A stretch of DNA of 64,000 bases, from positions 1-64,000 of the IMG/VR virus record IMGVR_UViG_3300028840_002431. One strand, given 5' to 3'. Below, piece after piece: positions 1 through 33,087 of the stretch (position 1 is its first letter; each line of letters begins with the position of its first letter). Both the position numbers and the translations under genes were made by a program. Below the pieces are notes generated by a model. It saw nothing but the letters and a program-made list of their open reading frames with translations, made no database searches and was not told the DNA's origin.

Positions 1-5705
<5,705 letters not shown>

Positions 5706-6804: not shown

Positions 6805-7644
6805 CTATTTTTTAGCTACCGACCAATCCTTGGCGTGGGTTAGGACCGCTGCCACGTGCTTACACACACGATTGACGCCGGAAGGGTCTCTGATGATTGG
6901 AAAGCTCGCCGTCCCACGAGGTTTTCCATCGATATATTCTTCCGTCTTGGCGTGGTATTCCGGTCCCTGCCAACGCCAAGCCGGGCACGAACACTTTATA
7001 TCCAAGTCCATCTTGGAGAACTTCGTGATTCTCCCTTTACGAGACGCCTTGATCTTGACGACCTTGGCTCCGTTGCCGCAATCGACAGAGAAAACCCAAC
7101 GCAAATTCTTCTTGTCCACACGTTTGGTGCTCACAGCGCATCGGCTGGCACGCTCGACATACCGTGGGTTAAGGTTTTCCGTTATGGTGTCCATCCGAAG
7201 AGCGACCTTGACTCTGGCACCGCTTTTCAGACGGAGTGTCGGGGAGTTGTGTAATGTGTATAATCCGACAACAAATTCGGCAGACGCAGACTTTGTATTA
7301 GGAATCCCGTCGCGGTAAGGGTACTTCGTCTTAGGGCCTACCCACTTACCCTTGCCGAAGGCTCCGATACCGTCATTCTTGTCCTCGTTGTCGTCGTTAA
7401 TCTCCGGACGTTCTTGGTCTTTTAAAAGATCGTCGGCCTCGTCCACTCGATGGATAGACTCGTCCTCAGGTTTGTCAAAGTTACGAGTTTCGTCGAGAGG
7501 TTTCACATAGGTCTTGGTGCCGGGAATATCCGACTCAAGAGGTAGCCCCTTGTCGCGTGGCTCGCCCCCCGGCAACGCCGACTCTGCCACCGGTCGTCCG
7601 TACGCCGGTCTAGTGGTAAGAGGTTGTGTTAGCGAAGTCTTCAT
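6805..7644 (-). CDS. SWIM zinc-finger domain protein
   Basis: C-terminal CSCPAW...VCKHVAAVL (CxC-xn-CxH). Confidence 0.75.
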   Translation of the reverse strand: MKTSLTQPLTTRPAYGRPVAESALPGGEPRDKGLPLESDIPGTKTYVKPLDETRNFDKPEDESIHRVDEADDLLKDQERPEINDDNEDKNDGIGAFGKGKWVGPKTKYPYRDGIPNTKSASAEFVVGLYTLHNSPTLRLKSGARVKVALRMDTITENLNPRYVERASRCAVSTKRVDKKNLRWVFSVDCGNGAKVVKIKASRKGRITKFSKMDLDIKCSCPAWRWQGPEYHAKTEEYIDGKPRGTASFPIIRDPSGVNRVCKHVAAVLTHAKDWSVAKK

Positions 7645-7650
7645 CTCTTT

Positions 7651-8826
7651 TCAGGCTATGGCCGTTTTGAACTTGTCCTTGTTCTTCTGGTGTTCCTCAC
7701 GCCATTTCTTGGCGTCCTCAGGACTCATGTTCTTGGTCGGATCAGCGGGCTTACCCTCTTCAAATCGAGACTCTTTCTCTTCGGCTGTCTCGGCTGTCCG
7801 CTCCAACGGATCAAGACGATCATGACGGCCAAACTCCCGCTCCTCCGCTTCCAGAGAACGTGCGTCGCCTTCTATGTCATCGGCCAACCGTTGCATCCTG
7901 GTGGCCAACGACATCATCTGGTTGCCGATGGTGCTCTCGAAAGCGGCGGCCTTCTTGGCGGAACTGTGTAAAGTCTTTGGGAGTCCCCGTAGAGGCCCGG
8001 TCTCAGACCACCCGGCTATGGAGTCCTGTAGAAGTTGGGCTACGCCGCGTTGCTGGTCCAAGGTGGCCCAAAGGTTGTCAGCGCTTTGACGTAAGGCCGC
8101 ACAAAGATCCTCCGGGAACAACCCCTCCCCATGACGGCGACTCTTGATCCTAATTGGCCTGAACGCGGCCGTTGCCTCCATCGAGAAAGCTGCGATGTGG
8201 CGAAGCGACGACGCCAACGATAACCGACTGGGCCGTTCTTTCTCAGGATCGGCTTCCGTGATATCCGAAGCCAACTTCCGCAGAACACCAGCAATCTCAT
8301 CGCCATTTTTGGCAGCGGCTGTCTTGGAATCCCCTTCAAGATCATAAATAAGGGCTATCAAGTCCTGGGTTTTGAGGGTCCCCCCTTGTGCCGATGCTGC
8401 CAGCCTCTCTAACCGTTCCACGGCCTCTGGAATGTTCATAACTTTCTCCTCAGATTGTCTTTTGACTCGTCGAATTCGGACATCCTCTAGGGCGTTCTCA
8501 AGCTCCTCGACCTTCTCTGGGCGTAAGGTGTCCTTGATCTCTTCGTAATCCAGCTTCGACGCTGCCAAGGCGGCAGCGCTCAAAGCCTTGTCCATCCGCA
8601 TCAAAGTGTCCGGAATTCCGTGGATCAGGTGGGCGGCCACCTCGAAGAAGTGGTCCCGATGGTCTGATTTGTTGACGAGCGCTACAGCCTCGTCCACGTA
8701 CTTCCGGAGTTGGGCGCACCTCAACCTAGCGTCCCCCAACTCCTCAAGGAGAAACACGGATATACCGCTGGCATCTTTGGCAGCGGCGGCTTCTTTTTTA
8801 GGGCGTCGCAGACAGGAGTCTTCCAC
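7651..8826 (-). CDS. Hypothetical helical protein, putative head-associated
   Basis: 391-aa ORF, GGAG SD before GTG, several K/R-x-A motifs (SKTAA, ERTAE, FKTAIA). Confidence 0.7.
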   Translation of the reverse strand: MEDSCLRRPKKEAAAAKDASGISVFLLEELGDARLRCAQLRKYVDEAVALVNKSDHRDHFFEVAAHLIHGIPDTLMRMDKALSAAALAASKLDYEEIKDTLRPEKVEELENALEDVRIRRVKRQSEEKVMNIPEAVERLERLAASAQGGTLKTQDLIALIYDLEGDSKTAAAKNGDEIAGVLRKLASDITEADPEKERPSRLSLASSLRHIAAFSMEATAAFRPIRIKSRRHGEGLFPEDLCAALRQSADNLWATLDQQRGVAQLLQDSIAGWSETGPLRGLPKTLHSSAKKAAAFESTIGNQMMSLATRMQRLADDIEGDARSLEAEEREFGRHDRLDPLERTAETAEEKESRFEEGKPADPTKNMSPEDAKKWREEHQKNKDKFKTAIA

Positions 8827-8899: not shown

Positions 8900-10027
8900 T
8901 TAACTTTGGAAGACCTCTGGAAACTCCGCCATTAACTTAGCTTTGAACTCATCTGACTCGGCTACGAACACAGCCCTGATGACATCGGGGCGGTCGTCGA
9001 AGTCAGCTTGCAGCCGGGCCAGCTTCTTCTTTGGAGTAGCCGAAAAATCATAGGACTCCGGGAAATCATCACACATGCTGCGTGCGATCTGAATTCTGGC
9101 GTCCCCGGTACCGTCTTCCAACATTACAGCTTTCTTCTCTGCGGCTCTCGGATGAGGCTGCGCCCGTTTGGTCTTCTCGGAGACGTTCGTGGTCTTGAAC
9201 GTAATACCGTCTTCTTCCCGGACGGCCTCCTTGGCCTTGCCGTCACCGCTTGTGGGGTCCGCCACCGCAGTGCCGCCACCGACCTCCTGGGTAAGCTTCA
9301 TCCCCTCCTTCTCCTGCTTCTTCTTACCCTTGACCGTGGCCACCTTGGTAGGCTGGTCTTTGTCGGAAGTAATATACTGCGAGCGCAGAGAACGCTTCTT
9401 CTCCAGGTAAGCCTCCCGATCCTCTGGGGTCATACGTTCCAGGGCCTCTTCTTCTGAGATACCCTCGCCCGGATCGATCTGGACATTCTCCGCTTCCCTG
9501 AGGGCCGAACCAGCGGACTCTGCCGTCAACTGGCTCTTGGATTTAGCCGCTGTCTTCAAGGCTCGAACCGGAACCCCGTCCTGAGGCTCGACTACCTCCG
9601 TGCCCACCTTTGACTTACCGCCCATTTTGGACCGCGCCGCCTTGTTCTTCTTCTGAGTAGAAGAAGCGTGCTCAGCGGTGCTCATCACAACCTGTTCGTC
9701 CGAGTCAGTTGTAACAGGTTCGATGGGTTTGGCTTCCCCGTCATCACTCGTGGCTGGACGAACCTTGATGTTGGCCGAAACCGGCCTACCATAATCAGGG
9801 TTGTCTTCCTCATAGACCTCGGAAGGCACAATCCATTCAGCCGTGACAGCGCTCCGAAGTTGAGGGAAGTTATATTCCGCCCCAGCGTATTTAACGGTTG
9901 AGCCGTCGAACTCTACTTCCGAGTCCTTTGCGACAGTTATGTCGAAAGCACCTAAAGCAAAGCTACGAGTAGCTGTGAAACTATTGAAATCGCCTGATTT
10001 ATATTTGATCTCCATTGTAATCTCCAT
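8900..10027 (-). CDS. Hypothetical charged protein
   Basis: 375-aa ORF; shares a 33-aa segment with the 30136-31710 product. Confidence 0.75.
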   Translation of the reverse strand: MEITMEIKYKSGDFNSFTATRSFALGAFDITVAKDSEVEFDGSTVKYAGAEYNFPQLRSAVTAEWIVPSEVYEEDNPDYGRPVSANIKVRPATSDDGEAKPIEPVTTDSDEQVVMSTAEHASSTQKKNKAARSKMGGKSKVGTEVVEPQDGVPVRALKTAAKSKSQLTAESAGSALREAENVQIDPGEGISEEEALERMTPEDREAYLEKKRSLRSQYITSDKDQPTKVATVKGKKKQEKEGMKLTQEVGGGTAVADPTSGDGKAKEAVREEDGITFKTTNVSEKTKRAQPHPRAAEKKAVMLEDGTGDARIQIARSMCDDFPESYDFSATPKKKLARLQADFDDRPDVIRAVFVAESDEFKAKLMAEFPEVFQS

Positions 10028-10070: not shown

Positions 10071-10727
10071 TTAAAGACGCCAATCGATGGGCCGACCCCC
10101 GAACATTTCGAGGGCGACGTTCACCTTTGAAAAAGGCTTGCTTCCGAAGAATCCCTTGTTTGCGCTCATAGGACTTGGATGCGCTGACTCGACAACCACG
10201 TGTTTCTCGGCGTCAATAAGAGACGCCTTGTCTCTCGCGTAACGACCCCAAAGGACAAAGACCATCGGGCGGTCCCGGTCACTCAAGAGTCTGATCACCG
10301 CGTCGGTGAATGTCTCCCACCCCTGGTCTCGATGAGATCCGGCCGCGTGCGCTCTCACGGTCAAGACAGAGTTGAGGAGAAACACGCCCTGTTCAGCCCA
10401 CTTGAGTAGGTGGCCGTGGGTAGGGATAGGGCAACCAACATCGCTCCGAAGCTCCTTGAATATGTTTTGGAGACTAGGAGGAGCCAACGTTTCCGGTAGA
10501 ACAGAGAAGCACAAGCCGTGGGCTTGCTTCCGACCATGGTACGGGTCTTGCCCCAGGATAAGAACGCGGACCTCGTCGAGAGGCGTGGCGTTAAACGCTG
10601 CGAAAACAGCCCCGGACGGTGGGTATACGGTGGTTGTTGCTCGTTCTTGTCTTACGAAATTGACGAGAGCTTGGAAGTAGGGCTTCTTGAATTCGGAGCC
10701 TAAAGCGGTTTTCCAAGAGGGATGCAC
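10071..10727 (-). CDS. ung: Uracil-DNA glycosylase, family 1
   Basis: Motifs ILGQDPYH, HGLCFSV, GVFLLNSVLTV, VFVLWG, HPSPMS. Confidence 0.97.
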   Translation of the reverse strand: MHPSWKTALGSEFKKPYFQALVNFVRQERATTTVYPPSGAVFAAFNATPLDEVRVLILGQDPYHGRKQAHGLCFSVLPETLAPPSLQNIFKELRSDVGCPIPTHGHLLKWAEQGVFLLNSVLTVRAHAAGSHRDQGWETFTDAVIRLLSDRDRPMVFVLWGRYARDKASLIDAEKHVVVESAHPSPMSANKGFFGSKPFSKVNVALEMFGGRPIDWRL

Positions 10728-12803: not shown

Positions 12804-13682
12804 CTAGACGCGAGTGACCACGATCCTGGTGAGGCCACGCGGGTTGAAAGCACCGATGCCCAGATTCTCGAAGCACGAGAAGCCGATGGTACGGGCCTTC
12901 GGATCGTCCGCCGACAGAACGGTGATCTCGGTGCGAACCGGGATACGGCCGAACTGCTCAGGCTCGCAGCAAACATACGCGAAGCCGGACGGTACCAGCC
13001 TGGATGTGATGATCTGAGCACCCCACAGAACGGCCTGGAGACCGGTCTTGAGCAAGGTGGCCTGACTCTCGATATCCAGAATGTCACGACCGAACTTACG
13101 GATGTCCGCGTAATCGACGGCGTTCATGTAGATGCGAGCGACACGGAGATCGTGCCTCTCAACCTCTGCGAACGCATCAGCGAGCACTGCGGGCGAAATG
13201 GGCGCAACCACCGGTACGTCTGGGTTGGTCTGGCCCGGAAGTGTGTCGAAGCCCGAGACAGCGATGCTGTCAAGGATTGCAAACACACGCTCGTCCTCTG
13301 CCGCCTGAATCTGAGCCTTGGCCAGATCCTGAGCACGCTCGATGAGATCGAAACGACGCTCCTTGATCTGGGTCAGGGGGATTTCAGGGTTCGAGGCAAT
13401 CTCAAACAAGGGGAAGATCACGCGACGCGGCTTCTGAATGGCGAGAATGTTCTCACCCTCTTCACCCACGACGAACGCCGTGACATCCGGGTCCTTGTCA
13501 TAGATCGGCAACGCACCGTCGGGCAGTTGCTCGACGAGGAAGGTCTTGCGACCAACGGCCGAGTAGTCCCGACGAAGACGGAGCGGTTGAATCATGGAAG
13601 CGGCGAGCTTCGCACGTCCAGCGGCCGTCTTGATGTACTCGCTGATGACTTGTTGCTTGACTTGGTTAGAAACTTGACCCAT
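12804..13682 (-). CDS. Major capsid protein (HK97 fold)
   Basis: 292 aa; position after protease, scaffold and decoration genes; FEIASNPEI, AQIQAAEDERVF and C-terminal NPRG resemble the mycobacteriophage Bxz1-type MCP as recalled. Confidence 0.9.
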   Translation of the reverse strand: MGQVSNQVKQQVISEYIKTAAGRAKLAASMIQPLRLRRDYSAVGRKTFLVEQLPDGALPIYDKDPDVTAFVVGEEGENILAIQKPRRVIFPLFEIASNPEIPLTQIKERRFDLIERAQDLAKAQIQAAEDERVFAILDSIAVSGFDTLPGQTNPDVPVVAPISPAVLADAFAEVERHDLRVARIYMNAVDYADIRKFGRDILDIESQATLLKTGLQAVLWGAQIITSRLVPSGFAYVCCEPEQFGRIPVRTEITVLSADDPKARTIGFSCFENLGIGAFNPRGLTRIVVTRV

Positions 13683-14436: not shown

Positions 14437-15642
14437 TTAGCGAGTTCCGAAAACGTCCCGAACGTCAGGGGCCGACTTCCAGAGCTTGGACAGCTTGTCG
14501 ATACCTTCGTCTCCACCAGCGGACGAAGCGCCGCCCAGCTTAGAGACACCCTCGGTAGGCTTGGTACCAACTGTCCGGGTGGAAGCGGTACGAACGGCCG
14601 CCTCCTTCTTCTCGCCCTCGTCCTCGTCCTTCTTCTCGTCCTCGCCCTGTTCAGCGGCGAAAAGCTGTTGAAGGACCTCGTCTTCTGGACCCAGGTCTTC
14701 GACGGTCACATCCATCTGGGCTGGCTCCATTTGGATATCCGTCTCAGCCGTCTGGCAACCAGCACCGGCCAGCATGTCGTCCAAAACCTGCTCGTCGGTC
14801 TGGATCACTTGCTCCTGGGGCTGAGCAGTCTGTGTCTGTTGCTGCAAAGCCTCCTGGATCATGTCCTGGACCTGTTGGCTGACTTGTTGAACGTCCTGGA
14901 CCTGGACCTGTTGGTCCTGGGCTTGCTGGGCCTGAGCTTGCTGGGCCTGGACCAGTTGCTGAATCTGCTCCTGGGCCTCTGTGAGATTCCCGGCCTGGAT
15001 GTTCTTGACCACCTCTTCGGCTGTCACATCCTTGGCTTTCTTCTCCTGGCCCTCCTCGTCGTCGTCCTTCTTCTCGCCTTCGTCTTCGGCGGCGGCTTTG
15101 TCACCCTCTTCGGCGGCGGCTTTGTCACCCTCGCCCTCGTCATCGGCCTTCTTGGACGACTGTTGATCTTGGTCCTGATCGCCACCCTGATCATCGTCAT
15201 CGTCATCGTCTTCATCGTCGCCCGCCAACCGCTTGTGGGTATCGATCAACTCTTGATCGGGCAGGTGCATGAGAGACACGGACTGATCTTCGATGGCTTC
15301 CTCAGAGGCGTCCTTCATCATGAGCTTCGCAACAGCGATGCACAGATCCGCCTTCTTGAGTAAGACCTCTTTCGACGCCGTCTTCTCCGGATGATTGAAG
15401 GTATCGCCCCTCATCTCAGGCATACCAATCTCATTCCGACGAACGTCGTCACCAGCGTACTCGGACTCCCAGGTGTTAGGAGTGTGTACGTCTTCAGCGA
15501 ACGTTGACGGATCGCCTGTGACATACTCATCCGCAGGGGGCTGGGTACGGGTCTGGTTCATGGTGTAAGGATCTGCCACTTTGTTTAGAGCAGCAGCCTT
15601 CTTCATTACTTCTTCTCGATTCCAGGTAGAACGCTCACGCAT
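14437..15642 (-). CDS. Capsid scaffolding protein
   Basis: Between protease and decoration/MCP; very acidic and Gln-rich low complexity; C-terminal LSKLWKSAPDVRDVFG candidate capsid-binding tail; many K/R-x-A sites. Confidence 0.75.
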   Translation of the reverse strand: MRERSTWNREEVMKKAAALNKVADPYTMNQTRTQPPADEYVTGDPSTFAEDVHTPNTWESEYAGDDVRRNEIGMPEMRGDTFNHPEKTASKEVLLKKADLCIAVAKLMMKDASEEAIEDQSVSLMHLPDQELIDTHKRLAGDDEDDDDDDDQGGDQDQDQQSSKKADDEGEGDKAAAEEGDKAAAEDEGEKKDDDEEGQEKKAKDVTAEEVVKNIQAGNLTEAQEQIQQLVQAQQAQAQQAQDQQVQVQDVQQVSQQVQDMIQEALQQQTQTAQPQEQVIQTDEQVLDDMLAGAGCQTAETDIQMEPAQMDVTVEDLGPEDEVLQQLFAAEQGEDEKKDEDEGEKKEAAVRTASTRTVGTKPTEGVSKLGGASSAGGDEGIDKLSKLWKSAPDVRDVFGTR

Positions 15643-15687: not shown

Positions 15688-17163
15688 TTACGACCGTCCT
15701 AAGGCGTACAGCCGACCTTTTTCCAGCAATTGGGCAGCTTCGCTGCCTGTCACTGCCCGGCCGAGCACCTGACGACAAGCCGTCAGGTAGGTCTCTACAT
15801 CTTCATATGGGCCTGTCCCACCTACATTAAGAACGGCCCTATAAACTCTATTTTCGCCAGCCATTGAGGATTTCTTAGTCAGCAAGTCAAGAACTCTGGA
15901 TACAGCTAACACCTCTCTACCCGTAAACCCAGCTTTCCTAACTAAGGACCAACCTCCGTACCTATGTAGAATTACTCCGTGAAGAACCTTTCTAGCCTCT
16001 GTCTTTCCAACAAAAGAAATCACCATTTTGGCGACCTTACGCCATCCGGGGTTCTTCAAGGCTGACCGGATCAACGTCTCATTTTGTTGGTTAGGATCGA
16101 TAGCCCGGACCTTATCCACTTCTTGCTTGTTAAGTTCTTCTCTAATGTTTTCAACGACTTGGTCGCGGACCGCGTCCGTTAAGTCGGTAATAGCTTTTTG
16201 AAGAGGGGCCTCCTGTTTAGGCTCCTCTTTCGGGGCGACATCGTCGTCAGGCACGAACTGTTGTTGCTGACCCAGCCGGGCGGCCTTGGGCATATGGTTA
16301 GGATCAGCCACCGGAGACGGACGCGAGAAAGCTATGTTCATTCGTGTTTCAAGGCCCTCAAACCCGTCGGCCGAGAGAATGTTCCTGAGGACAGCGCCCT
16401 TGAACGCCGGGTTGGCAACCCACGAGGCTTCGATGAACTTAACAGAATCAGGGTCCGAAAAATGACCACATAGCTCAGCGATTATACGTTCGATGCCCTG
16501 TTCGTCCCTGAACTTATTACCCTTGAAGTATCGTACACAGGAACATAGCTGGGCTTCGTCCAGCGCCACGTTTCCACACTTCGTGCATGTGGTGGACGAA
16601 GTGGAGCATCCCATGGACAGGGTGCCCAACTGACCGCTCTTGATGGCCCGGATCAGAGGAGCGTGTCTAAGATCGTTAGCAATCAGGATGTCGATGTATA
16701 CAGAGTCTCCAACATCCCTGGCCGCAGCATCTATGATTCGACCTTTGGATAGCTCCGGGATCTGGACGTGCTCAACATAGGACTGAGCGCCTACAAACGT
16801 CTTGAAGCTGGCCAGTAAGAGCTTGCGCTCGAAAGCGTCGTTATTGTTGTTAACAAACGGGGCCGTCTTCGGGGTAATGTAATAATCGGTATACTTACGA
16901 TCCACCTCAAAGCCGTCCACAAAGTGGCGGCCGAGAGGAGCCGTTGCCTCATCAACATCCACTGACGCCACGATGGTCGCGTGGCTCAGCATGTACTTGG
17001 CCGGATCATACTCCTGTAGGATGACCTTGGCTGTACGCTTCTGAAAGTCTGGCGAAGGAATTACGGCGTTGCTGCGCAGAGCATCCCACTCCGAAAAACT
17101 TACGTCCGGCTTTTGAACAGTTGCTTTTGCGTACTTGAGAAAAGCCATCTGACCTTTAGCCAA
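15688..17163 (-). CDS. Prohead maturation protease with Cys cluster
   Basis: FVEHVQ...KGRIIDA...YIDILIA...IKSGQLGTLSMGCS then CTKCG...CSC, typical of herpes-like phage prohead serine proteases; sits between portal and scaffold. Confidence 0.75.
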   Translation of the reverse strand: MAKGQMAFLKYAKATVQKPDVSFSEWDALRSNAVIPSPDFQKRTAKVILQEYDPAKYMLSHATIVASVDVDEATAPLGRHFVDGFEVDRKYTDYYITPKTAPFVNNNNDAFERKLLLASFKTFVGAQSYVEHVQIPELSKGRIIDAAARDVGDSVYIDILIANDLRHAPLIRAIKSGQLGTLSMGCSTSSTTCTKCGNVALDEAQLCSCVRYFKGNKFRDEQGIERIIAELCGHFSDPDSVKFIEASWVANPAFKGAVLRNILSADGFEGLETRMNIAFSRPSPVADPNHMPKAARLGQQQQFVPDDDVAPKEEPKQEAPLQKAITDLTDAVRDQVVENIREELNKQEVDKVRAIDPNQQNETLIRSALKNPGWRKVAKMVISFVGKTEARKVLHGVILHRYGGWSLVRKAGFTGREVLAVSRVLDLLTKKSSMAGENRVYRAVLNVGGTGPYEDVETYLTACRQVLGRAVTGSEAAQLLEKGRLYALGRS

Positions 17164-17443
17164 CCCTACGCTTCAGTTCTAACACTAGCTGAGACAGCTT
17201 TTCGAACGACTGTCTAGCCTCTTTGCTGCTCTCGTAGGACTCTGACCACCCTTCGTCCAATAGAGGGTTCACACCTTTCAGATCCTTACCCAAATCTTTG
17301 AGGGACCCCTCAGTCTTACCTACAGAACGCGCTAAGTCCGTCATAGCTTTGTCGATATCACGGACCAACTCGTGTAAGCTCTTTCCAGCGCTTCTTGAAA
17401 GACCCCGACGGTCGTAAGTCGTATTTCCGCCTCTGCTCACCAC
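17156..17443 (-). CDS. Hypothetical coiled-coil protein
   Basis: 95-aa ORF overlapping both neighbours by a few nt. Confidence 0.55.
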   Translation of the reverse strand: MVSRGGNTTYDRRGLSRSAGKSLHELVRDIDKAMTDLARSVGKTEGSLKDLGKDLKGVNPLLDEGWSESYESSKEARQSFEKLSQLVLELKRRVG

Positions 17444-18159
17444 CCTAACGACTCCCCCTCAGGATTCAGAATGGAGTCAGATTTGATGAGGAACAAATCC
17501 TGCGGGCACGCAAAAAGCCGCACACATGCGCCATCCTTCATCTTGTAAGTGGTGCGACGCATCTGGGTTCCACACTTGGGGCAAGAGGGCTTCCCAGCAT
17601 CGATTTCCCTCTGGGTCGCCCGGTATGTGCGGTTCAGGGCAACCCAGTAGGCGGCGGTTTTCTCTACGTGTTGCTGAATCCTAAGGTCTCTCAGCCGCTC
17701 TGAGACGCGATAAAACTTCTCGACTTCATCGCGTAAGCTATCGTCCGAAACTCCGGAGGCGGCGTAACGATGCCACAGCGCATCGTAGGCTCCCACCTCA
17801 TTCGCGCCATCCTTCCAGAGTTTCGCCAACTCATGATAAAAACCAGCGGGTAATTCAGACCCTCTCCACGGGGAAGAGGATGCCCAACGTTTTCGAGCTT
17901 CGGCAATGTCGTAGCTCATGTAAGATTGATCGAACTCCGGAGGCATGTAACATGTGAGTTTGGGGTCCACCCGGATGATTTCGTCCGGCGACATCCGTTC
18001 GTTGCCATAAGGCCACTGAACGTCAACTTGCCCCAACCCACGGTGGACCGCTGTTACGCGGCCCACGAACGGAGAAAGCGTAGATCCAGACGCCGGGGCG
18101 AATCGTTCAACGACATCCCCGATGCTGTAATCCTTAACGAGTTTCCAGAAGTCGATCAA
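17437..18159 (-). CDS. Hypothetical protein with C-terminal zinc ribbon
   Basis: CPKCG...LFACPQD. Confidence 0.7.
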   Translation of the reverse strand: MIDFWKLVKDYSIGDVVERFAPASGSTLSPFVGRVTAVHRGLGQVDVQWPYGNERMSPDEIIRVDPKLTCYMPPEFDQSYMSYDIAEARKRWASSSPWRGSELPAGFYHELAKLWKDGANEVGAYDALWHRYAASGVSDDSLRDEVEKFYRVSERLRDLRIQQHVEKTAAYWVALNRTYRATQREIDAGKPSCPKCGTQMRRTTYKMKDGACVRLFACPQDLFLIKSDSILNPEGESLGW

Positions 18160-21040: not shown

Positions 21041-22834
21041 CTACCACCGCTCCTCTTCACCGCCGCCCTCGGGTTTCGGCACCTCTTTAAGCTTCAATGC
21101 CTTTTGGACCCTATCGACCACGTCTGTGTTTTCGATGATACGGTCTGCCACGCCATTGTAGATGCCCCGGAGAGCTTCGTTGAACAGGGCGTCGTTGACC
21201 GTAAACATGTCCTTCTCTAACTTGAGCTTGGTGTCGTCCGGATCGATGTTGAACATCTCCAAAATGAGACTGATGTCGATCGACCCCTTCTGGTAGAGAT
21301 TGAACAGGGCGTCATAAGTGTCCTGGGAGTCCCGCAGCGGTAGTCTCGTGAACGAGAGACGAGGGTATAACACCACCTCACCACCCCAGGCGTTCTTCTC
21401 CACAAACCCCTTGCGCCGGGCAATGGGCTTAAAGAGATAGTTCTCCACATATTCCTGAACCATCTCCCGCAAGAACATGTACCGGGTGTTTATGACTTCG
21501 AGCTTGAGCCTGTCTCCGGAGTACAACGTCTCTCCGGATAACAGGCTCTCAGTGACACCCAGACCCGCGTACAGTTGCTTGTCCGTGATGTCATATTCGC
21601 TCGACAAATCCAGAAGCCGGTCCCTGGCTCCGATTTCTTCCCAACGGACTTCATAGTTGGTGACAATCGAATAGTCAGGATCGACGAGGGCCAAATCGAC
21701 TTGCTCCCTCAAATCGTTAACATCCATCTCGGAAATTCTGTCGCCCCAGACGATACGCTTGGGCGTCATCGCCCTGGAAGCAATCTGGGTCTGAGCCTGA
21801 CGTAGCTTTTCCCGGTAGTACAACGTCCGGAGAACGCGGTCTAAGATGCTCTGCCCCAGGTCTTCGCCAGCACCACGTCGCCCGGCTAGGTAATAACAGA
21901 ATGACCCCTCATCCGGGTCTGTGCCCAAGGGAATGAGTTTACCGTTTTCAATATGATCCCGTACCTCTTCAGGCATCTCGCGGACCATCTCTTCCGCGAA
22001 CTCGTCACCGGACTTAGCCTGATTTATAAGAGCGCGGTCCCGCTCGGCCGGTATCAACTCAACACGTAGCTTATCCGTGAACGAATAAGTCGTGACTTTT
22101 ACCTGATCAATGGGCAGGAGGATGAGCCGATCCCATCCCTGATAGTACTCCTGGTAGTAAGATAGCTCCTGATCCTCACGGTCCTCTCGTTCGACCAGAC
22201 CTACCTCAGGCTCTTCTTTAGCCTCACCTGACTCCGTGACAATCGACTTAACACCAATAGCCTTCTCGTCATATCCGATGTCATCCGGAACCTTGACCTC
22301 GGAGTCTTCAGCAAACACGAAGACTCCGCCATCCAACCAGTAGTGGTGAACCATTGTGACGAGCCGCTGGAACAACTTTATACGGTCACACATGGTCGTG
22401 AAGAACCACAGAATGTAGTTGGCGTAGTCGTGAGGGTCTTTGAAGCCTTCCGGGCAAGTAGTTGGCTTCGGGGTAGCCAACCGGACCTTCGACAAGGGTA
22501 GTTCCGTATGCAGATCGATGGACTGCCCCACGATCGGGTCGGTGTTATAAAAGTGCCTGTAGATCTCCCGCTTCTCACGTAGAGACTGCGGCAACTCCAG
22601 AAAATCGGTAGACAACTGCGGGGAGAAGAACTGCCCGGCAGAAGCCATCGTCGTATTCCCGCTGCCGTAGCCGCCAAAGTCGCAATTGGCTATCTTCTGG
22701 AGCTTACGAGCCTCTAGCTCCTTTGGGGTCAAAGAACTGACCGGGCCTTTGGCAATGTACGGGGAAGGCATCGCCCGTGTGACCACGGTCGCGTAAGGAG
22801 CAGAAGTGGCGTTCGTGAACTTTCTAGTGGGCAT
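21041..22834 (-). CDS. Portal protein
   Basis: 597 aa downstream of terminase; YRHFYNTDPIVGQSIDLHTELP, SILDRVLRTLYYREKLRQAQ and LYAGLGVTESLLSG match large-phage portal patterns. Confidence 0.8.
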   Translation of the reverse strand: MPTRKFTNATSAPYATVVTRAMPSPYIAKGPVSSLTPKELEARKLQKIANCDFGGYGSGNTTMASAGQFFSPQLSTDFLELPQSLREKREIYRHFYNTDPIVGQSIDLHTELPLSKVRLATPKPTTCPEGFKDPHDYANYILWFFTTMCDRIKLFQRLVTMVHHYWLDGGVFVFAEDSEVKVPDDIGYDEKAIGVKSIVTESGEAKEEPEVGLVEREDREDQELSYYQEYYQGWDRLILLPIDQVKVTTYSFTDKLRVELIPAERDRALINQAKSGDEFAEEMVREMPEEVRDHIENGKLIPLGTDPDEGSFCYYLAGRRGAGEDLGQSILDRVLRTLYYREKLRQAQTQIASRAMTPKRIVWGDRISEMDVNDLREQVDLALVDPDYSIVTNYEVRWEEIGARDRLLDLSSEYDITDKQLYAGLGVTESLLSGETLYSGDRLKLEVINTRYMFLREMVQEYVENYLFKPIARRKGFVEKNAWGGEVVLYPRLSFTRLPLRDSQDTYDALFNLYQKGSIDISLILEMFNIDPDDTKLKLEKDMFTVNDALFNEALRGIYNGVADRIIENTDVVDRVQKALKLKEVPKPEGGGEEERW

Positions 22835-23261: not shown

Positions 23262-23825
23262 TCACAGAGTGACCTGGATACCTAAGAAATGCTGATTGAC
23301 GGGCTGTGGCTTTTGTGCCGTCCGCCCAACGTTGAGTGCTGGAGCGAGAGGACTTCCAGAAAGGGTCAACTCGTCCTCCTTGGTCCACAGACCGCGCAAC
23401 GAGAAATACAAAGTATCGTTGACGTTATACACCAGTGGAACGAGCGGGCCGCCGCCTGTCCGAGACGCATACGTGTAATGCTCGTACGAAGAAGTCGATA
23501 TTAAGGCGCTCCCTCCACACAAGACAGCGTCCCCGTAGACAAGTTGTTGGCGGGTCATGGCCGTGTACTGGTCGGCCGACTCGTCCGATCCCCACAATAA
23601 GAACCCACCGAACTGCCCAGAGGAATACGTTACCACGAACTCGTCGGCGTCTGAGTTCACCCACTGGACCCCTTGGCCTCCCGGCCAACCGCCTTGTAAC
23701 ATCGCGTCGTCTACGCGAACCATGAAGGTGTCATCCTTCATGAACATCACGCAATCTCGGCCCCGGATTATATCAAACCCGTGAAAATCGACTTGAAACG
23801 AACCTATGGGCGGTGGAAAAGGCAT
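23262..23825 (-). CDS. Decoration-protein-like paralog 3 of 3
   Basis: GWPGGQGV.W, GFLLWGSDES, YEHYTY, YFSLRGLWT shared with two upstream neighbours. Confidence 0.75.
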   Translation of the reverse strand: MPFPPPIGSFQVDFHGFDIIRGRDCVMFMKDDTFMVRVDDAMLQGGWPGGQGVQWVNSDADEFVVTYSSGQFGGFLLWGSDESADQYTAMTRQQLVYGDAVLCGGSALISTSSYEHYTYASRTGGGPLVPLVYNVNDTLYFSLRGLWTKEDELTLSGSPLAPALNVGRTAQKPQPVNQHFLGIQVTL

Positions 23826-24343
23826 CAGATCAACGGTTGAACCATAAGGTATTGTTTGTTGTCAGCACTGGGAGCGTGAATCACGGTCCCCACGAAAATA
23901 GTGTTCGGCGCTCTCGGGTCCCCACTGATGGTCCACTCATCCTGGGGTGTGAAATACCCTCTCAGAGAGAAATGAAGCCGGGTTCCCGGCACATAAGCAT
24001 TCTCCACCAAAGGAGGAACCAGCCGGGACTGCAATGTGTAACGTTCGTACGTTAACGTTGAGATGATCCAGGTCCCAGCGCCTATAACCCCGAAGTTGTA
24101 CTTCGTCTGGTTCCCGGTATAGGAGATGAACTGATCACTGTCTTCATTGGAACCCCACAGCAAAAAGCCAGCGGCTTCTCCGTCCGAGAAGGTCACGGTG
24201 AAATTATCCGACCCGCTGTCGAACCATTTGACCCCCTGGCCACCGGGCCAGCCAGCTTGTGACATCGCCGCAGACAGATTGACCGGGACGGCCAAATCCT
24301 TGACGAATATAATCACATCTCGTTCGCGGACAATTTCTGTCAT
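23825..24343 (-). CDS. Decoration-protein-like paralog 2 of 3
   Basis: Same motifs; TGATG translational coupling. Confidence 0.75.
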   Translation of the reverse strand: MTEIVRERDVIIFVKDLAVPVNLSAAMSQAGWPGGQGVKWFDSGSDNFTVTFSDGEAAGFLLWGSNEDSDQFISYTGNQTKYNFGVIGAGTWIISTLTYERYTLQSRLVPPLVENAYVPGTRLHFSLRGYFTPQDEWTISGDPRAPNTIFVGTVIHAPSADNKQYLMVQPLI

Positions 24344-24864
24344 CAGAGAATAGCCTGTACAGTCAAATAATTATTACGAGATGGGACAGGACGTTGCACG
24401 ACTGATCCCACGAAGTTCCTGTTTGGCGCTCTAGGATCTCCCGAAAGCGTCCATTCGTCCTCGTTCGTCCAATAGCCTCTGAGCGAGAAAAGAAGACGGT
24501 CACTCGCGTTGTAGACGATTGGCACAAATGGACCACCCCCTGCCCTCGAAGCGTAGGTGTAACGTTCGTATGTTGAGGTCGTCATGAGCCAACCACCGAC
24601 ACCCAGAACAACGAACCTATACGTCGGCATGTTCCTGGTCATGGCTGTAAACTCGTCGGAAGATTCGTCAGAACCCCACAAGGCAAACCCGCCAAAACCG
24701 CCGTCGGTGATCGTGGTCAAGAAGTTGTCCTGTGTGGGTGGCACCCAGTTAAAACCCTGACCCCCAAGCCATCCAGCGGTGGCCACGCTTTCGGGCACTT
24801 CCGCCGTGAAGGTGAGAGCCTTCTGGAAAACGACAACATCACGTGAACGGAAAATTTCGGGCAT
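24343..24864 (-). CDS. Decoration-protein-like paralog 1 of 3
   Basis: Start reassigned to ATG 24864 (MPEIFRSRD, aligns with paralog N-termini). Confidence 0.75.
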   Translation of the reverse strand: MPEIFRSRDVVVFQKALTFTAEVPESVATAGWLGGQGFNWVPPTQDNFLTTITDGGFGGFALWGSDESSDEFTAMTRNMPTYRFVVLGVGGWLMTTSTYERYTYASRAGGGPFVPIVYNASDRLLFSLRGYWTNEDEWTLSGDPRAPNRNFVGSVVQRPVPSRNNYLTVQAIL

Positions 24865-24866
24865 CG

Positions 24867-25121
24867 TTATACCAGTTGATCCGACTTCTTCTTGCGTTCG
24901 GGCATCTGCCCCCAACCAGTGACAATCTCTTTCAACAGTTCAATATGAACCTGATCACCATTTACAATCTTCTCCCAAGAGCCAGCGCACCTCCTAAACA
25001 CCGATCGTATTGCCGAATAATCACGGAACCCCACCACGGTGTCGTCCGACACCATGTGCTTCACCATCTCCTTGATGACCTTATTGGCAAATACCTTCGG
25101 TTTTTTAGCTTCTTTGTACAT
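24867..25121 (-). CDS. Hypothetical protein
   Basis: 84-aa ORF filling the gap between terminase and paralog 1. Confidence 0.6.
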   Translation of the reverse strand: MYKEAKKPKVFANKVIKEMVKHMVSDDTVVGFRDYSAIRSVFRRCAGSWEKIVNGDQVHIELLKEIVTGWGQMPERKKKSDQLV

Positions 25122-25123
25122 AC

Positions 25124-27166
25124 CTATCTCACACCACGAAGACGTAACCCCAAACGGCGCGGGTCTACACGATCCGTGAAACCTCCATGCTTGCGTGCTC
25201 GCATCATTTGATAGCGACCCGGCGTCATGCCCGCGCCCATGTGGCGGGCACCCTCCTTGCCGTACACGAATTTCTCATCGCGCATACGCTCCGAAGTTAA
25301 CCATACCGCTCGCACAAAAGCGTCACTACGGTCGTCGTGGTGGCCCACGGTCTGCGGAGCCTCCACGACCACGATGTTCCTGGACATCTGTTGCGCTTGA
25401 AGTTCCAGTAGCTCCTCAATGAACGCCGAATGCCTACTACCTTGTTTGACTGGGAAATCGTACAAACGGAGACTCTCGTCGAACATCAGCATCTTCGTGT
25501 TCTGGTAGATACGTGACGTGAGGTCCCTCTGGAAGTACTCGCTCTTGAACTGTGTCAGCCCCTTCTTGAGAAGAGCCTGTTCCAACGGAATCCCGTTCCA
25601 ACGGTCAAAAAGACCGTGTGTTATGTGGAACCTCTTTGTTAGAACGTCGATCCAGTGGCCGATTTCGTCGAAGTCTAGACGGCTCGCGTCGCCCAAGAGT
25701 TTGCAGTACGGGGTTGTGAAATTATTACCCAGGTGTGGGTTCGACTCGCGCCAGTCAACACCGGCTTGCCAGTATTCGTGGTAAGCCAGCACAATCTTGT
25801 TGTTTTCGGCGCATGTTATCGCGATGGCCGTGCCGTCTCCCATCAACCCGATATCTATACCCATCTGGTAAGGGTAACGCGGAATCCCGACGACCTGAGG
25901 ACGCAAGTTGGGATCTACACATGAAACAAGATCCTCTTCCCGCTCGATCCAACCACGCACACGATCCGAGAACTGCGCTCCATGCTCTGTCATGAACACG
26001 TTGGCGTCCTCGTGGTACTTCTGCTTGTAGTAAGACTTCGGGATTGTCGGGTTCACCTCCCAGGTAGGGGCCTGGATTGCCAAAATGTTCTCAGACCCGA
26101 CACCCCTGCTCATCGCCAGATGGAATAGATCGTAGAACTTACCCACCTTATTGAGCGGAGACGAAATTGTGATGATTCGAGACTCGACAGGGTACATTTC
26201 CCCGTCGGACATCTTCATCGGCATCCCGTCGTCTCCCTTGGGAGAGAAGGCAGCCGTGCTGGGCGTTACAGCGTCGTATATGTCCTTGGCCGACGACTGG
26301 CCCGTGTCCTGGTAGTGGGCCATCTCGTCCATAATCACGACGATATTACCCGACCCACGAAGGCCCTTGGCTATACAACTCTTGAAGGTGACACGTAGAG
26401 TTGCCTTACCATTGAAACTGACGAACTTGCCGTCTTGGTGACGAAGCGTGGGTCCGTAGCGATCCAGGTCGTAGGGGGTCCTGAACTGAATGTGTGACAG
26501 GGTGTTGTTGGCGATATACGGCTTGAAGTAGTCACACTTCGCTAAGTGTGTAGTCACCTCGTTGAAAAGAATACCCGCCTGATCCTTATCGGTGGCCACC
26601 GACGTGATCTGGATGCGGTTCCCGTTAGGTAGCCCGTAATACTCCTGGGGGTTGAATAAATTTAGTAAACGGTAGACTTCGTAGCTGGCGAATATACCAC
26701 TGAGTGTTGTCTTCCCGGCACGACGGCCGATGGCCAAAACTAACTCGCGCCGTTCGTGATCTTGCTCCCCGATGTTACAACGACCCTCGTTGTACAGATA
26801 ATGGAGATACTCTTTCTCGGTGAACTCGTAGAGGAGATCCTCACCGAACATGTCGGTGACTCTTATGGTCTTTTCTTCGTCGTCTAACGGAAGATGGTAG
26901 TAGAGCTTGACGATAAAGCGCTGGGCCGGGAACAACTTCATCCCGATTCCCCAGGCTTGCTCGATGTACTCTATGATATTAAAAATACGGGGCTGAAACG
27001 GACGTACCTCGTCCTCGTCAAAACCGTCCGGGTCGAGTTCCCCGTCCGCTATCTTGTTCTGTAGCTGGATATCAAGCTGTTTTTGCTCTACAGCTTGCTT
27101 GGCGCGAACTCCAGCATCTCTAATGAGTGCTGAAACCCCTGCTCCGGATCGCTTTCTCTGTGCCAC
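25124..27166 (-). CDS. terL: Terminase large subunit
   Basis: Walker A IGRRAGKT, Walker B IVVIMDE, RNase H-like MGIDIG...D and HHDDRSDA. Confidence 0.92.
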   Translation of the reverse strand: MAQRKRSGAGVSALIRDAGVRAKQAVEQKQLDIQLQNKIADGELDPDGFDEDEVRPFQPRIFNIIEYIEQAWGIGMKLFPAQRFIVKLYYHLPLDDEEKTIRVTDMFGEDLLYEFTEKEYLHYLYNEGRCNIGEQDHERRELVLAIGRRAGKTTLSGIFASYEVYRLLNLFNPQEYYGLPNGNRIQITSVATDKDQAGILFNEVTTHLAKCDYFKPYIANNTLSHIQFRTPYDLDRYGPTLRHQDGKFVSFNGKATLRVTFKSCIAKGLRGSGNIVVIMDEMAHYQDTGQSSAKDIYDAVTPSTAAFSPKGDDGMPMKMSDGEMYPVESRIITISSPLNKVGKFYDLFHLAMSRGVGSENILAIQAPTWEVNPTIPKSYYKQKYHEDANVFMTEHGAQFSDRVRGWIEREEDLVSCVDPNLRPQVVGIPRYPYQMGIDIGLMGDGTAIAITCAENNKIVLAYHEYWQAGVDWRESNPHLGNNFTTPYCKLLGDASRLDFDEIGHWIDVLTKRFHITHGLFDRWNGIPLEQALLKKGLTQFKSEYFQRDLTSRIYQNTKMLMFDESLRLYDFPVKQGSRHSAFIEELLELQAQQMSRNIVVVEAPQTVGHHDDRSDAFVRAVWLTSERMRDEKFVYGKEGARHMGAGMTPGRYQMMRARKHGGFTDRVDPRRLGLRLRGVR

Positions 27167-30135: not shown

Positions 30136-31710
30136 TTATCCTTCTCTCTCGTAAGGACCTTCTTCAACCTCTCTCTGATATACATAGTCACATTCCATGT
30201 TGCGGGTGTCTGAGTCCCACTTGATGTACGGCTGGTTCCCCTGGTCGTAGCTGTACGCAGTCCCAGGTATCATGTCTCTCGGGGTTTCAACGGGAGCGCT
30301 CTCGACCTCAGGCACCTCACTGGTGGCGTTTACCTCATTGTCGGCCTTGTCTCCCTCGTAATAGTCCGAACGGGCGACAGAAGGCATGACATCAAGAGGG
30401 AGCATAGAACAAGCGGTCTTCCACTTCGCGTTACGACCGCCTACAGCCAGTTCAACGGTCGGTGTCGTGTCATCACGCTCTGTCGATCCGCCATCCAGGT
30501 CGCCGGGTAGTTCCGAAGACGGCCCATAAACACCACCATCAGAGTCAACAGTCCCATAACCTCCCGCGCCCTGGCCATGAGCATCGTTGCCATCGCCGTA
30601 CCCGATTCCGAAGTCGTAGCCTTTTGTGGGAGTGGGGTCGGTGTCCTTGTCCGGGAGATTTGAGGCCGCGCTTCGCATTGGTTCGATCTGAACACCTTCC
30701 GCAGCCTCAAGTTCCGCCTCTACCGATCCCGGCGTTACCAGGGTCTTAGACTTGGTCGAAGTCTTCAGGGTGCGGACAGTAGTACCCCGCACGCTGGCCG
30801 CTAACTCCCGATCCCGCTCCGCTGTCTTGTCCAACAGGTTGTTGTCCCACTCGCTTTGATAGAGGTACTCGTTCGGGACGCCGTCAGTCCGGCTCCATTC
30901 GTCGTGTGTGGACATCGGCTCTTCTGTGTTATGAGAGCCAAAAGGGCCAGTCTGATCCACATCGGCCCGGTCCAGGTGTTGGACACGAGGTCCAGGCAAC
31001 GTCTGGGTTGGAAGGGAACTACCCCGTCGATCGTAACCATACTCAGAAGCCTGTTTGACGTGCTGCCCGGACTCGACGACCTCCGCAGCGTCCGGCAGGT
31101 TAGCGTTATCAGGTAGCTGGGATTTCGGCTCCCCCTCCCCTTCTTCCATCTCCGCCCGCTCACCGCTCTGCTCTGCCTCCTCCATACCTTCTTCGACTTC
31201 TTCTTCCGGGTTCTCCATGATTTGCTCGGCCTCGCCCACGAGCCTTTCCACGCTTTCGATGTCGTTTCTTTCCAACTCTGCGAGCTTCGGCTTCCAGTGA
31301 GGGGCGTTGATCTCATCGTGAATGGTGTCGGAAATCGAAGACAACCCTTCAGCGGCGTTATAGAGCGCCTTACGTACCTCCTTGATGGACATCACATAAC
31401 CCTGGCCGCCGATGAGGCCGTCAGGGGATACTGTAGAAGACTTGATCTTGGACAACTGCCGATGAGCCGTCAGTGTGTGGCCCAGAGCAACGCTCATCGC
31501 CCAGAGTGTCTGGGCCAACGGCTTGAGAGCCTTGGGATCATAAGGAAAGTTCTTTGGGATCGCACGCTTCATGAAGCTGCCACCGCCGAAGTCATCCTTA
31601 GACTTGAACTGGTCTGGATCGAACTCCGCGACCTTTATTCGAGGTTCGAGGTGAGCCTCTCGCAAATGGCGGTCCAGAACGGCCTTTGTCTTTTCATACG
31701 CTTGCGGCAT
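30136..31710 (-). CDS. Hypothetical acidic protein, putative head-associated
   Basis: Start reassigned to ATG 31710, just after the upstream stop; repeated K/R-x-A-S-x-L-P units. Confidence 0.7.
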   Translation of the reverse strand: MPQAYEKTKAVLDRHLREAHLEPRIKVAEFDPDQFKSKDDFGGGSFMKRAIPKNFPYDPKALKPLAQTLWAMSVALGHTLTAHRQLSKIKSSTVSPDGLIGGQGYVMSIKEVRKALYNAAEGLSSISDTIHDEINAPHWKPKLAELERNDIESVERLVGEAEQIMENPEEEVEEGMEEAEQSGERAEMEEGEGEPKSQLPDNANLPDAAEVVESGQHVKQASEYGYDRRGSSLPTQTLPGPRVQHLDRADVDQTGPFGSHNTEEPMSTHDEWSRTDGVPNEYLYQSEWDNNLLDKTAERDRELAASVRGTTVRTLKTSTKSKTLVTPGSVEAELEAAEGVQIEPMRSAASNLPDKDTDPTPTKGYDFGIGYGDGNDAHGQGAGGYGTVDSDGGVYGPSSELPGDLDGGSTERDDTTPTVELAVGGRNAKWKTACSMLPLDVMPSVARSDYYEGDKADNEVNATSEVPEVESAPVETPRDMIPGTAYSYDQGNQPYIKWDSDTRNMECDYVYQREVEEGPYEREG

Positions 31711-31711
31711 T

Positions 31712-31996
31712 TTATCCCTTGAGAGGTTCACCGTTATCGTCAAACAAGCGCTCGATGAAGAAGCTGCCGTCGCCCTCCTTCTTGAGCGCCCAGAGGTCGC
31801 GGTCGCTCTTATGGATCAGAGTGTCCGACGACAACCGAACGAAGTTGTGCAAATCCTTGATCGAGGCGACCTTAGCCCGCCCTGTCATGGTTTGCGGACG
31901 TAAGATGTGTTCTTCGCGCTTGAACAGAGCATCCAAGCCCGTGGCACCCGATACTTCCATTTGACCAAGATCAAAATCTGCCATCCCTAACCTCAT
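31712..31996 (-). CDS. Hypothetical protein
   Basis: 94 aa; ATGA overlap (alternative start 31984, MADFDLG). Confidence 0.65.
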   Translation of the reverse strand: MRLGMADFDLGQMEVSGATGLDALFKREEHILRPQTMTGRAKVASIKDLHNFVRLSSDTLIHKSDRDLWALKKEGDGSFFIERLFDDNGEPLKG

Positions 31997-32940: not shown

Positions 32941-33087
32941 TCAGTCCGCTCGAACCAATGTGTAGGCGGTCCGGGACTCGTCAAGTTCCCGCTTATAGGT
33001 CTCTTCTAACTCCTTCTCGGCCGCTTCCATCGCCGCGAGTGCGTCACTCTCAGCCTCTATTATAGGGAGCGGCTCCTTCTCACACAC
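32941..33087 (-). CDS. Small acidic protein (48 aa), not in the ORF track
   Basis: GTG TGT GAG AAG...GAC TGA gives MCEKEPLPIIEAESDALAAMEAAEKELEETYKRELDESRTAYTLVRAD; start overlaps the upstream stop. Confidence 0.5.
   Translation of the reverse strand: MCEKEPLPIIEAESDALAAMEAAEKELEETYKRELDESRTAYTLVRAD

What the first reader, a model, noticed from the sequence alone, without database searches (positions are those of the whole stretch)
9470..9568. 33-aa peptide shared between two otherwise unrelated proteins 21 kb apart
Seen: VRALKTAAKSKSQLTAESAGSALREAENVQIDP (9470-9568, in the 8900-10027 gene) versus VRTLKTSTKSKTLVTPGSVEAELEAAEGVQIEP (30679-30777, in the 30136-31710 gene). The match is ungapped with 17 of 33 identities and the DNA is clearly diverged; I saw no other similarity between the proteins. 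Inference: a mobile short interaction or docking motif, or an old gene-conversion patch kept under protein-level selection.
Basis: seen in the sequence. Interest (0 to 1): 0.6.

Follow-up and report, generated by a model that had tools for sequence, protein, structure and literature searches.

The report
Phage protein segment copied into another gene
The shared 33-residue peptide is real: it is the core of a conserved, unstructured segment of a core protein of a widespread group of huge phages. A piece of that gene was copied into a floppy, insertion-tolerant region of a second gene in a few close relatives, probably acting as a portable docking piece whose partner is unknown.

Summary
Both peptides are on the minus strand at the stated coordinates, with 17/33 identities ungapped. 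The score lies 9.7 SD above shuffles. A profile built only from other genomes' gene-A segments finds gene B at E=2.6e-7; the next best ORF in the 416.5-kb phage genome scores 0.39.

The origin is clear. The peptide is the core of a ~75-aa segment present in 120/120 relatives of gene A (8900-10027). Gene A encodes an SH3-like N-domain, a long linker and a helical C-domain. The segment is among its best-conserved parts but is predicted disordered.

In gene B's family (30136-31710) the segment is a rare insertion, found in 5/120 members, all in one small clade. It sits at two different sites in a ~330-aa disordered tail, with lengths of 33 to 72 aa. A third, unrelated family carries it at its N-terminus. 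So this is capture of a gene-A fragment, not chance, convergence or gene conversion.

Function is inferred only. The most likely reading is a fold-on-binding docking or assembly module, which would take B to A's partner. B's copy evolves fast and is often lost, so a neutral passenger remains a serious rival. No partner was identified, and the one co-fold gave no answer.

The parts
8900..10027 (-). Gene A (375 aa by the longest ORF; database aa from 10015). A core protein of a widespread huge-phage clade and the donor family of the segment.
   Evidence: ORF. There are 176 relatives at E<=1e-3, many on contigs of 0.1-0.53 Mb. No Pfam, PHROG or PDB match.
9776..10015 (-). Gene A N-terminal SH3-like beta-barrel domain (aa 1-80).
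   Evidence: AlphaFold2 pLDDT ~95. SH3 domains are the best structural matches, but only weakly (Z 5.5, rmsd 2.2 over 56 residues).
9362..9589 (-). Full conserved segment of gene A (aa 143-218): the motif core plus a following helix.
   Evidence: ~99% occupancy and among the best-conserved columns of family A. Present in 120/120 members. Core pLDDT is 40-60 and helix 188-215 is ~90. No Pfam family.
9470..9568 (-).
8903..9118 (-). Gene A C-terminal five-helix domain (aa 300-371).
   Evidence: pLDDT ~96. Weak resemblance to harmonin-homology domains (Z 5.1-5.4).
30136..31743 (-). Gene B (535 aa from TTG 31743; database aa from ATG 31710). The recipient of the copy.
   Evidence: ORF. There are 309 relatives. 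No Pfam, PHROG or PDB match.
31141..31563 (-). Gene B folded helical N-domain (aa 50-190 of the 524-aa call).
   Evidence: pLDDT 85-93. Generic helical hairpin, Z ~9 and non-specific. This is the only part shared with the distant relative LR745208.1.
30139..31140 (-). Gene B disordered tail (aa 191-524), with conserved short motifs and two insertion hot spots.
   Evidence: pLDDT 40-58. Conserved blocks separated by variable inserts.
30670..30819 (-). Lineage-specific insert in gene B at hot spot 1 (aa ~298-347), which contains the A-derived copy.
   Evidence: ~10% column occupancy in family B. Absent from the nearest complete relative L010 and present in L011.
30679..30777 (-). The 33-aa core, gene B copy (aa 312-344).
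12804..13682 (-). Context: major head protein.
   Evidence: phrog_2522, E=1.9e-49
14437..15642 (-). Context: acidic, Gln-rich protein between the protease and the major head protein; scaffold-like by position and composition.
   Evidence: Sequence. No family hit. Inference only.
15688..17163 (-). Context: head maturation protease.
   Evidence: phrog_18299 E=2.5e-9 and phrog_2774 E=6e-20
21041..22834 (-). Context: portal protein.
   Evidence: phrog_16240, E=3e-30
25124..27166 (-). Context: large terminase.
   Evidence: phrog_2 E=1.4e-17 and phrog_17415 E=5e-17

Best explanation
SHOWN. The two peptides are homologous. The 33 residues are the core of a ~75-aa segment (a basic strand-like stretch, a short helix, a 'VQI-x-P-G-x-G' turn and a longer helix) that is a hallmark of protein family A. 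Family A is a core gene of a widespread clade of huge phages and lies downstream of the head-gene block. A fragment of gene A was copied in frame into the long disordered tail of gene B in one small subclade. Copies sit at two different hot spots and range in length from the 33-aa core to 72 aa. A further copy sits at the N-terminus of a third, unrelated small family in other phages.

INFERRED. In A the segment is very conserved yet not folded on its own, so it most likely folds on binding. The partner could be another phage or host protein, or other A subunits. On this reading the copy in B (and in family C) is a portable docking piece that brings those proteins to the same partner, or lets them compete with A for it. 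In B this is an accessory, evolutionarily labile function.

My confidence is about 0.9 for the evolutionary part and about 0.5 for the docking function.
For: The match is far above chance, and an independent profile built from other genomes' A segments finds B at E=2.6e-7. The segment is in 120/120 family A members, at ~99% occupancy and high conservation. It is in 5/120 family B members, all inside one 12-row clade with 100% support. Two members carry it at site 1 (between the 'EWDN' and 'TD-x-TPT' blocks) and three at site 2 (before the 'VARSDYY' block). One site-2 copy (P0129) runs on into A's downstream helix and matches A segments at 59% over 69 aa, E=1e-25; another (P0132) matches at 64% over 39 aa, E=9e-15. 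A profile search of 1.84 billion representatives gave 78 hits. Nearly all had family A architecture; the rest were B-type proteins, a third family (P0298 E=2e-7, P0306 E=6e-4) and four repeat or low-complexity false hits. AlphaFold2 gives the segment core pLDDT 40-60 between confidently folded domains in A, and places the B insert inside a 330-aa tail of pLDDT 40-58. B copies keep the A consensus at 60% of A's most conserved columns, against 41% of the other columns.
Against: No binding partner was identified. The co-fold of full-length A with B residues 290-352 scored 0.00, which the tool rates as no evidence either way. B's copy evolves 2-4 times faster than the rest of B (pN 0.33 against 0.08 and 0.17). 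It is missing from the closest relatives, and one copy (P0127) looks degenerate. The enrichment of conserved positions in the B copies is modest. Family C lies among small non-structural ORFs, so a head-assembly role is not implied.
Confidence: 0.6

Rival explanations
1. Neutral passenger. Gene B's disordered tail tolerates insertions. A fragment of gene A landed there by illegitimate recombination, stays in frame only because it does no harm, and is decaying. On this reading it has no function in B.
For: The same two hot spots in B carry many unrelated inserts in other lineages: a ~70-aa helical piece, a Cys-rich piece and others. The A-derived copy is sporadic (5/120) and lost in sister taxa. 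It evolves faster than the rest of B. P0127's copy is degenerate.
Against: The same segment was captured or kept at two sites in B and in a third family, always in frame. The residues most conserved in A are preferentially retained. The rough dN/dS of the insert is about 0.56, which is below 1 but rests on 37 codons.
Confidence: 0.3
2. Capsid-targeting or prohead-protease signal. The segment directs proteins into the assembling head, as the T4 capsid targeting sequence does, and may be cut by the head protease.
For: Both genes lie on the same strand around a head-gene block of major head protein, protease, portal and terminase. In another relative, gene A also lies about 10 kb downstream of the capsid gene. 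Family C carries the segment at its N-terminus.
Against: There are only two copies in a 416-kb genome, and one in most relatives. The segment is internal, not N-terminal, in A and B. It is 33-75 aa long, against 10-20 aa for T4 signals (PMC5694885). No acidic residue at a fixed position is conserved across the A copies. Family C sits among non-structural genes.
Confidence: 0.08
3. Chance resemblance, low-complexity similarity or convergent evolution.
For: In the whole-genome all-against-all comparison the pair reaches only E=0.002.
Against: z=9.7 against shuffles. The independent profile gives E=2.6e-7. Related B copies match A at E=1e-25 over 69 aa.
Confidence: 0.01
4. Gene conversion between pre-existing homologous tracts of A and B.
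For: None beyond the local similarity itself.
Against: About 95% of B relatives have no tract at either site, and the nearest complete genome (L010) lacks it. The window's B copy is not closest to its own genome's A segment; that segment ranks 6th of 86. The DNA is near saturation at synonymous sites.
Confidence: 0.01

Closest known systems
T4 capsid targeting sequence (CTS) and the long propeptides of SPN3US/phiKZ head proteins
   Same: A short peptide shared by otherwise unrelated phage proteins and portable between them. Here the genes also lie near head genes.
   Different: CTSs are N-terminal, 10-20 residues long, carried by several cargo proteins per genome and removed by the head protease (PMC5694885). 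This segment is internal, 33-75 aa long, has two copies per genome at most, and no cleavage site is evident.
Molecular recognition features and short linear motifs in disordered regions, bound by small hub domains (SH3, alpha-alpha hubs such as the harmonin-homology domain)
   Same: It is a conserved island inside a predicted disordered stretch. Protein A also carries SH3-like and harmonin-homology-like end domains, which are folds typical of peptide-binding adaptors (PMC7948954, seen).
   Different: It is longer than classical linear motifs. The structural matches of A's end domains are weak (Z ~5). No binding was shown, and AlphaFold2 does not dock the segment onto A's own domains.
Modular exchange (domain shuffling) among phage proteins
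   Same: A gene fragment moved between unrelated genes of the same phage lineage, and insertion hot spots accept different modules.
   Different: The moved piece is a sub-domain-sized, disordered segment rather than a folded domain. The donor is a universal core gene, while the recipients are sporadic.
Cargo-loading peptides of encapsulins and the coat-binding C-terminal helices of scaffolding proteins (e.g. P22)
   Same: A portable peptide that would tie a protein to a shell or assembly partner.
   Different: Those peptides are terminal (C-terminal) and their partner is known. Here the position is internal and the partner is unknown. This comparison rests on general knowledge and was not tested.

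Membership tests
T4-type capsid targeting sequence | N-terminal position in the precursor | tested here: not met
   aa 150-182 of 371 in A and aa 312-344 of 524 in B. It is N-terminal only in the unrelated family C.
T4-type capsid targeting sequence | Length about 10-20 residues | tested here: not met
   The conserved unit is ~75 aa in A and 33-72 aa in the B copies. The reference length comes from PMC5694885.
T4-type capsid targeting sequence | Shared by several packaged proteins of one phage | tested here: not met
   Two copies in the 416.5-kb genome and one copy in a 174.6-kb related contig.
T4-type capsid targeting sequence | Removed by the prohead protease at an adjacent cleavage site | not testable with these tools
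   No proteomic data are available. No invariant acidic residue is seen in the family A copies.
Any curated protein family (Pfam, PHROGs, PDB sequences) | Significant profile match | tested here: not met
   No hit for whole proteins A and B. Across 74 segments scanned singly, the best Pfam E-value was 0.005, with no consistent family.
Disordered fold-on-binding recognition element | Lies in a region predicted to be disordered | tested here: met
   pLDDT 40-60 in A and 40-57 in B.
Disordered fold-on-binding recognition element | Conserved more strongly than the surrounding linker | tested here: met
   Family A conservation profile. The segment is present in 120/120 members.
Disordered fold-on-binding recognition element | Binds a defined partner | tested here: inconclusive
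   One co-fold (A with B residues 290-352) scored ipSAE 0.00. The tool states that this is no evidence either way.
Gene-conversion tract | Homologous tract present in both genes before the event, with orthologues alignable across it | tested here: not met
   Column occupancy is ~10% in family B. The nearest complete relative lacks the tract.

The most novel reading that the evidence does not exclude
The segment is a previously undescribed portable assembly or docking module of a large clade of uncultivated huge phages. It would be the binding site through which core protein A, an adaptor with SH3-like and hub-like end domains, engages a central partner. Other phage proteins (B, C) would repeatedly capture it to plug into, or compete for, the same partner. 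That would make it a phage-internal analogue of motif mimicry.
Probability: 0.35. Interest if true: 0.6.

Novelty: new member of a known kind. Interest (0 to 1): 0.42.

Why it matters
Huge phages encode hundreds of proteins with no known function. This result marks the best-conserved, yet unstructured, part of a core protein as a self-contained unit that evolution has moved between genes. That gives an experimental handle: one ~75-aa peptide to use as bait to find what protein A binds. It also gives a worked example of how disordered tails in phage proteins pick up functional pieces. If the copy in B turns out to be a neutral passenger, the case still documents insertion hot spots in a conserved disordered protein.

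Tried and rejected
1. Function by homology. Pfam and PHROGs on A, B and their neighbours, PDB profile searches, Foldseek against PDB and BFVD, VIA-align and ESM Atlas searches all gave no functional lead. They showed only a weak SH3-like and a weak harmonin-homology-like fold for A, and a generic helical hairpin for B.

2. Co-folding of full-length A with B residues 290-352. The result was no answer (score 0.00), which counts neither for nor against binding. MCP, portal and protease were not co-folded because only one job was allowed.

3. Concerted evolution within a genome. The window's B copy is not closest to its own A segment (rank 6 of 86), and in the 411.6-kb relative the rank is 7, so there is no sign of ongoing conversion.

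4. Single or double origin of the B copies. Pairwise identities (30-58% between B copies, 41-65% to the best A) cannot separate two captures from one capture followed by a move within the gene.

5. An internal second copy of the motif in A (aa ~216-262). Profile-profile comparison gave probability 1.3%, so this was rejected.

6. Further copies elsewhere in the genome. None were found; the next best ORF has E ~0.4.

7. The distant relative LR745208.1. Its A homologue keeps only a degenerate start of the motif, its B homologue is the N-domain alone (226 aa), and the profile finds nothing.

8. Four hits in the large search (P0300, P0301, P0303, P0305) are repeat or low-complexity proteins and were dismissed.

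9. Literature searches found nothing on these families.

Full report
SETTING. The window is the first 64 kb of a single 416,539-bp contig with 55% G+C. It is a huge phage. The window carries a head-gene block on the minus strand: large terminase 25124-27166, portal 21041-22834, head maturation protease 15688-17163 and major head protein 12804-13682. An acidic, Gln-rich, scaffold-like gene (14437-15642) lies between the protease and the major head protein. Gene A (8900-10027) lies downstream of this block, after a uracil-DNA glycosylase gene. Gene B (30136-31743; the database start is ATG 31710) lies upstream of the terminase. Neither A nor B matches any Pfam, PHROG or PDB entry.

THE OBSERVATION. 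BLASTP extends the match to 18/36 at E=6e-6 for the pair and finds nothing else shared. The ungapped score is 76, against 32.8 +/- 4.5 in 500 shuffles (z 9.7). The DNA is 62.6% identical with synonymous sites near saturation (pS 0.67, pN 0.27), so what is conserved is the protein. I checked whether the match survives multiple testing. In an all-against-all comparison of 572 ORFs of the genome it reaches only E=0.002, which is marginal on its own. The decisive test was independent. A profile made only from the corresponding segment of 68 gene-A relatives from other genomes hits gene B at E=2.6e-7, with the next ORF at 0.39. There are exactly two copies in the genome.

WHERE IT COMES FROM. Word-based searches gave 176 relatives of A and 309 of B, many on contigs of 0.1-0.5 Mb, so both are core genes of a widespread, uncultivated huge-phage clade.

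In family A the peptide is the centre of a ~75-aa segment (aa 143-218). This segment has ~99% occupancy, is among the best-conserved parts of the protein, and is present in 120 of 120 members.

In family B the peptide falls in alignment columns with only ~10% occupancy, between two well-conserved blocks, so it is an insertion. Only 5 of 120 members carry an A-like piece. Two of them (the window's protein and P0122) have it at this first site. Three (P0127, P0129, P0132) have it about 130 residues further on, at a second site. P0129's copy is 72 aa long and continues into the helix that follows the core in A. It matches A segments at 59% over 69 aa (E=1e-25), and P0132's copy matches at 64% over 39 aa (E=9e-15). 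This excludes chance and convergence.

On a tree of B built from conserved columns, all five carriers fall in one 12-member clade (support 100), mixed with non-carriers. At least five gains or losses are needed to explain the pattern. The nearest complete relative (398 kb, L010) lacks the insert, whereas L011 has it. The same two sites hold unrelated inserts in other lineages, so they are insertion hot spots.

A profile search of 1.84 billion representative proteins gave 78 hits. Almost all had family A's length and architecture. The rest were the B-type proteins, four repeat or low-complexity false hits, and a third small family (P0298 at E=2e-7, P0306 at E=6e-4) that carries the segment at its N-terminus. 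That family has no relative in this genome and lies among small non-structural genes.

The direction is therefore from A, where the segment is universal, to B and C, where it is sporadic. Whether B's two sites reflect two separate captures or one capture followed by a move cannot be resolved. Gene conversion is not the right term, because B had no homologous tract to convert.

STRUCTURE. AlphaFold2 with 116 sequences gives A four elements: an SH3-like barrel (aa 1-80, pLDDT ~95), a long linker, a confident helix (188-215) and a five-helix C-terminal domain (300-371, pLDDT ~96). The motif core (146-186) has pLDDT 40-60. Structural matches are weak: SH3 domains at Z 5.5 and harmonin-homology domains at Z ~5.3. 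B has a helical N-domain (aa 50-190, pLDDT 85-93) and a ~330-aa tail of pLDDT 40-58, even though the tail contains many conserved short motifs. The insert lies inside this tail.

WHAT IT PROBABLY DOES. A segment that is nearly invariant across a large family but does not fold by itself is the usual signature of a piece that folds on binding to something else, either another protein or other copies of A. That is an inference, not a result. If it is right, the copies in B and C would take those proteins to the same partner or let them compete with A.

Two findings caution against a strong claim for B. First, the copy evolves faster than the rest of the protein: pN is 0.33, against 0.08 for the N-domain and 0.17 for the rest of the tail, with a rough dN/dS of 0.56 on 37 codons. 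Second, close relatives have lost it. In its favour, B copies keep A's consensus at 60% of A's most conserved columns against 41% elsewhere, and the piece has been kept in frame in three different contexts. A neutral passenger in an insertion-tolerant tail is the main rival, at about 0.3.

A capsid-targeting role like the T4 CTS fits the neighbourhood but fails the defining features that could be tested: position, length and number of carriers.

VERDICT. Mobility of the motif is supported and gene conversion is not. The docking function is plausible but unproven. This is a new example of a known kind of event, the capture of a module by unrelated phage genes. The module itself is undescribed, and it marks the likely interaction site of a core protein of huge phages.

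Noticed in passing
window 7651-8826 (-), C-terminal ~45 aa; genome G000:C1:293736-295373 (-): This is a second shared peptide in the genome. The C-terminal tail of the gene just downstream of gene A ('EEGKPADPTKNMSPED...' onwards) recurs three times in an otherwise unrelated 545-aa protein 285 kb away. The three matches are 78% identity over 50 aa (E=3e-17), 53% over 88 aa and 65% over 37 aa.
   Followed up: partly
family B alignment; window equivalents about 30820 (site 1) and about 30420 (site 2): Gene B's disordered tail has two insertion hot spots. In other lineages these carry unrelated inserts: a ~70-aa helical piece, a four-Cys piece, and pieces of 100-250 aa. Their donors were not sought.
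   Followed up: partly
window 23262-24915 (-): Three tandem paralogous genes of 172-190 aa, 45-53% identical to each other, lie between the portal and the terminase. They have no family match.
   Followed up: no
window 3-5702 (-): A very long open frame of at least 1900 aa runs off the window start and has internal repeats. The repeats show up as mutually similar spurious ORFs on the opposite strand at 586-1185, 1432-1854, 2806-3246, 3562-4536 and 4828-5688.
   Followed up: no
window 10071-10727 (-): A uracil-DNA glycosylase gene (PF03167, E=2e-16) sits between the head-gene block and gene A.
   Followed up: no
window 6805-7644 (-) and 17437-18159 (-): Seen in the sequence only, not tested. 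The first protein ends with a CxC...CxH pattern like a SWIM zinc finger. The second has a CxxC...C pattern like a zinc ribbon.
   Followed up: no
window 33080-33721 (-), 33771-35555 (-), 35582-36988 (-): Just upstream of gene B's block lie a sigma-factor-like gene, a 5'-3' exonuclease fused to an N-terminal extension, and a clamp loader. B therefore sits at the border between the replication/transcription genes and the packaging genes.
   Followed up: no
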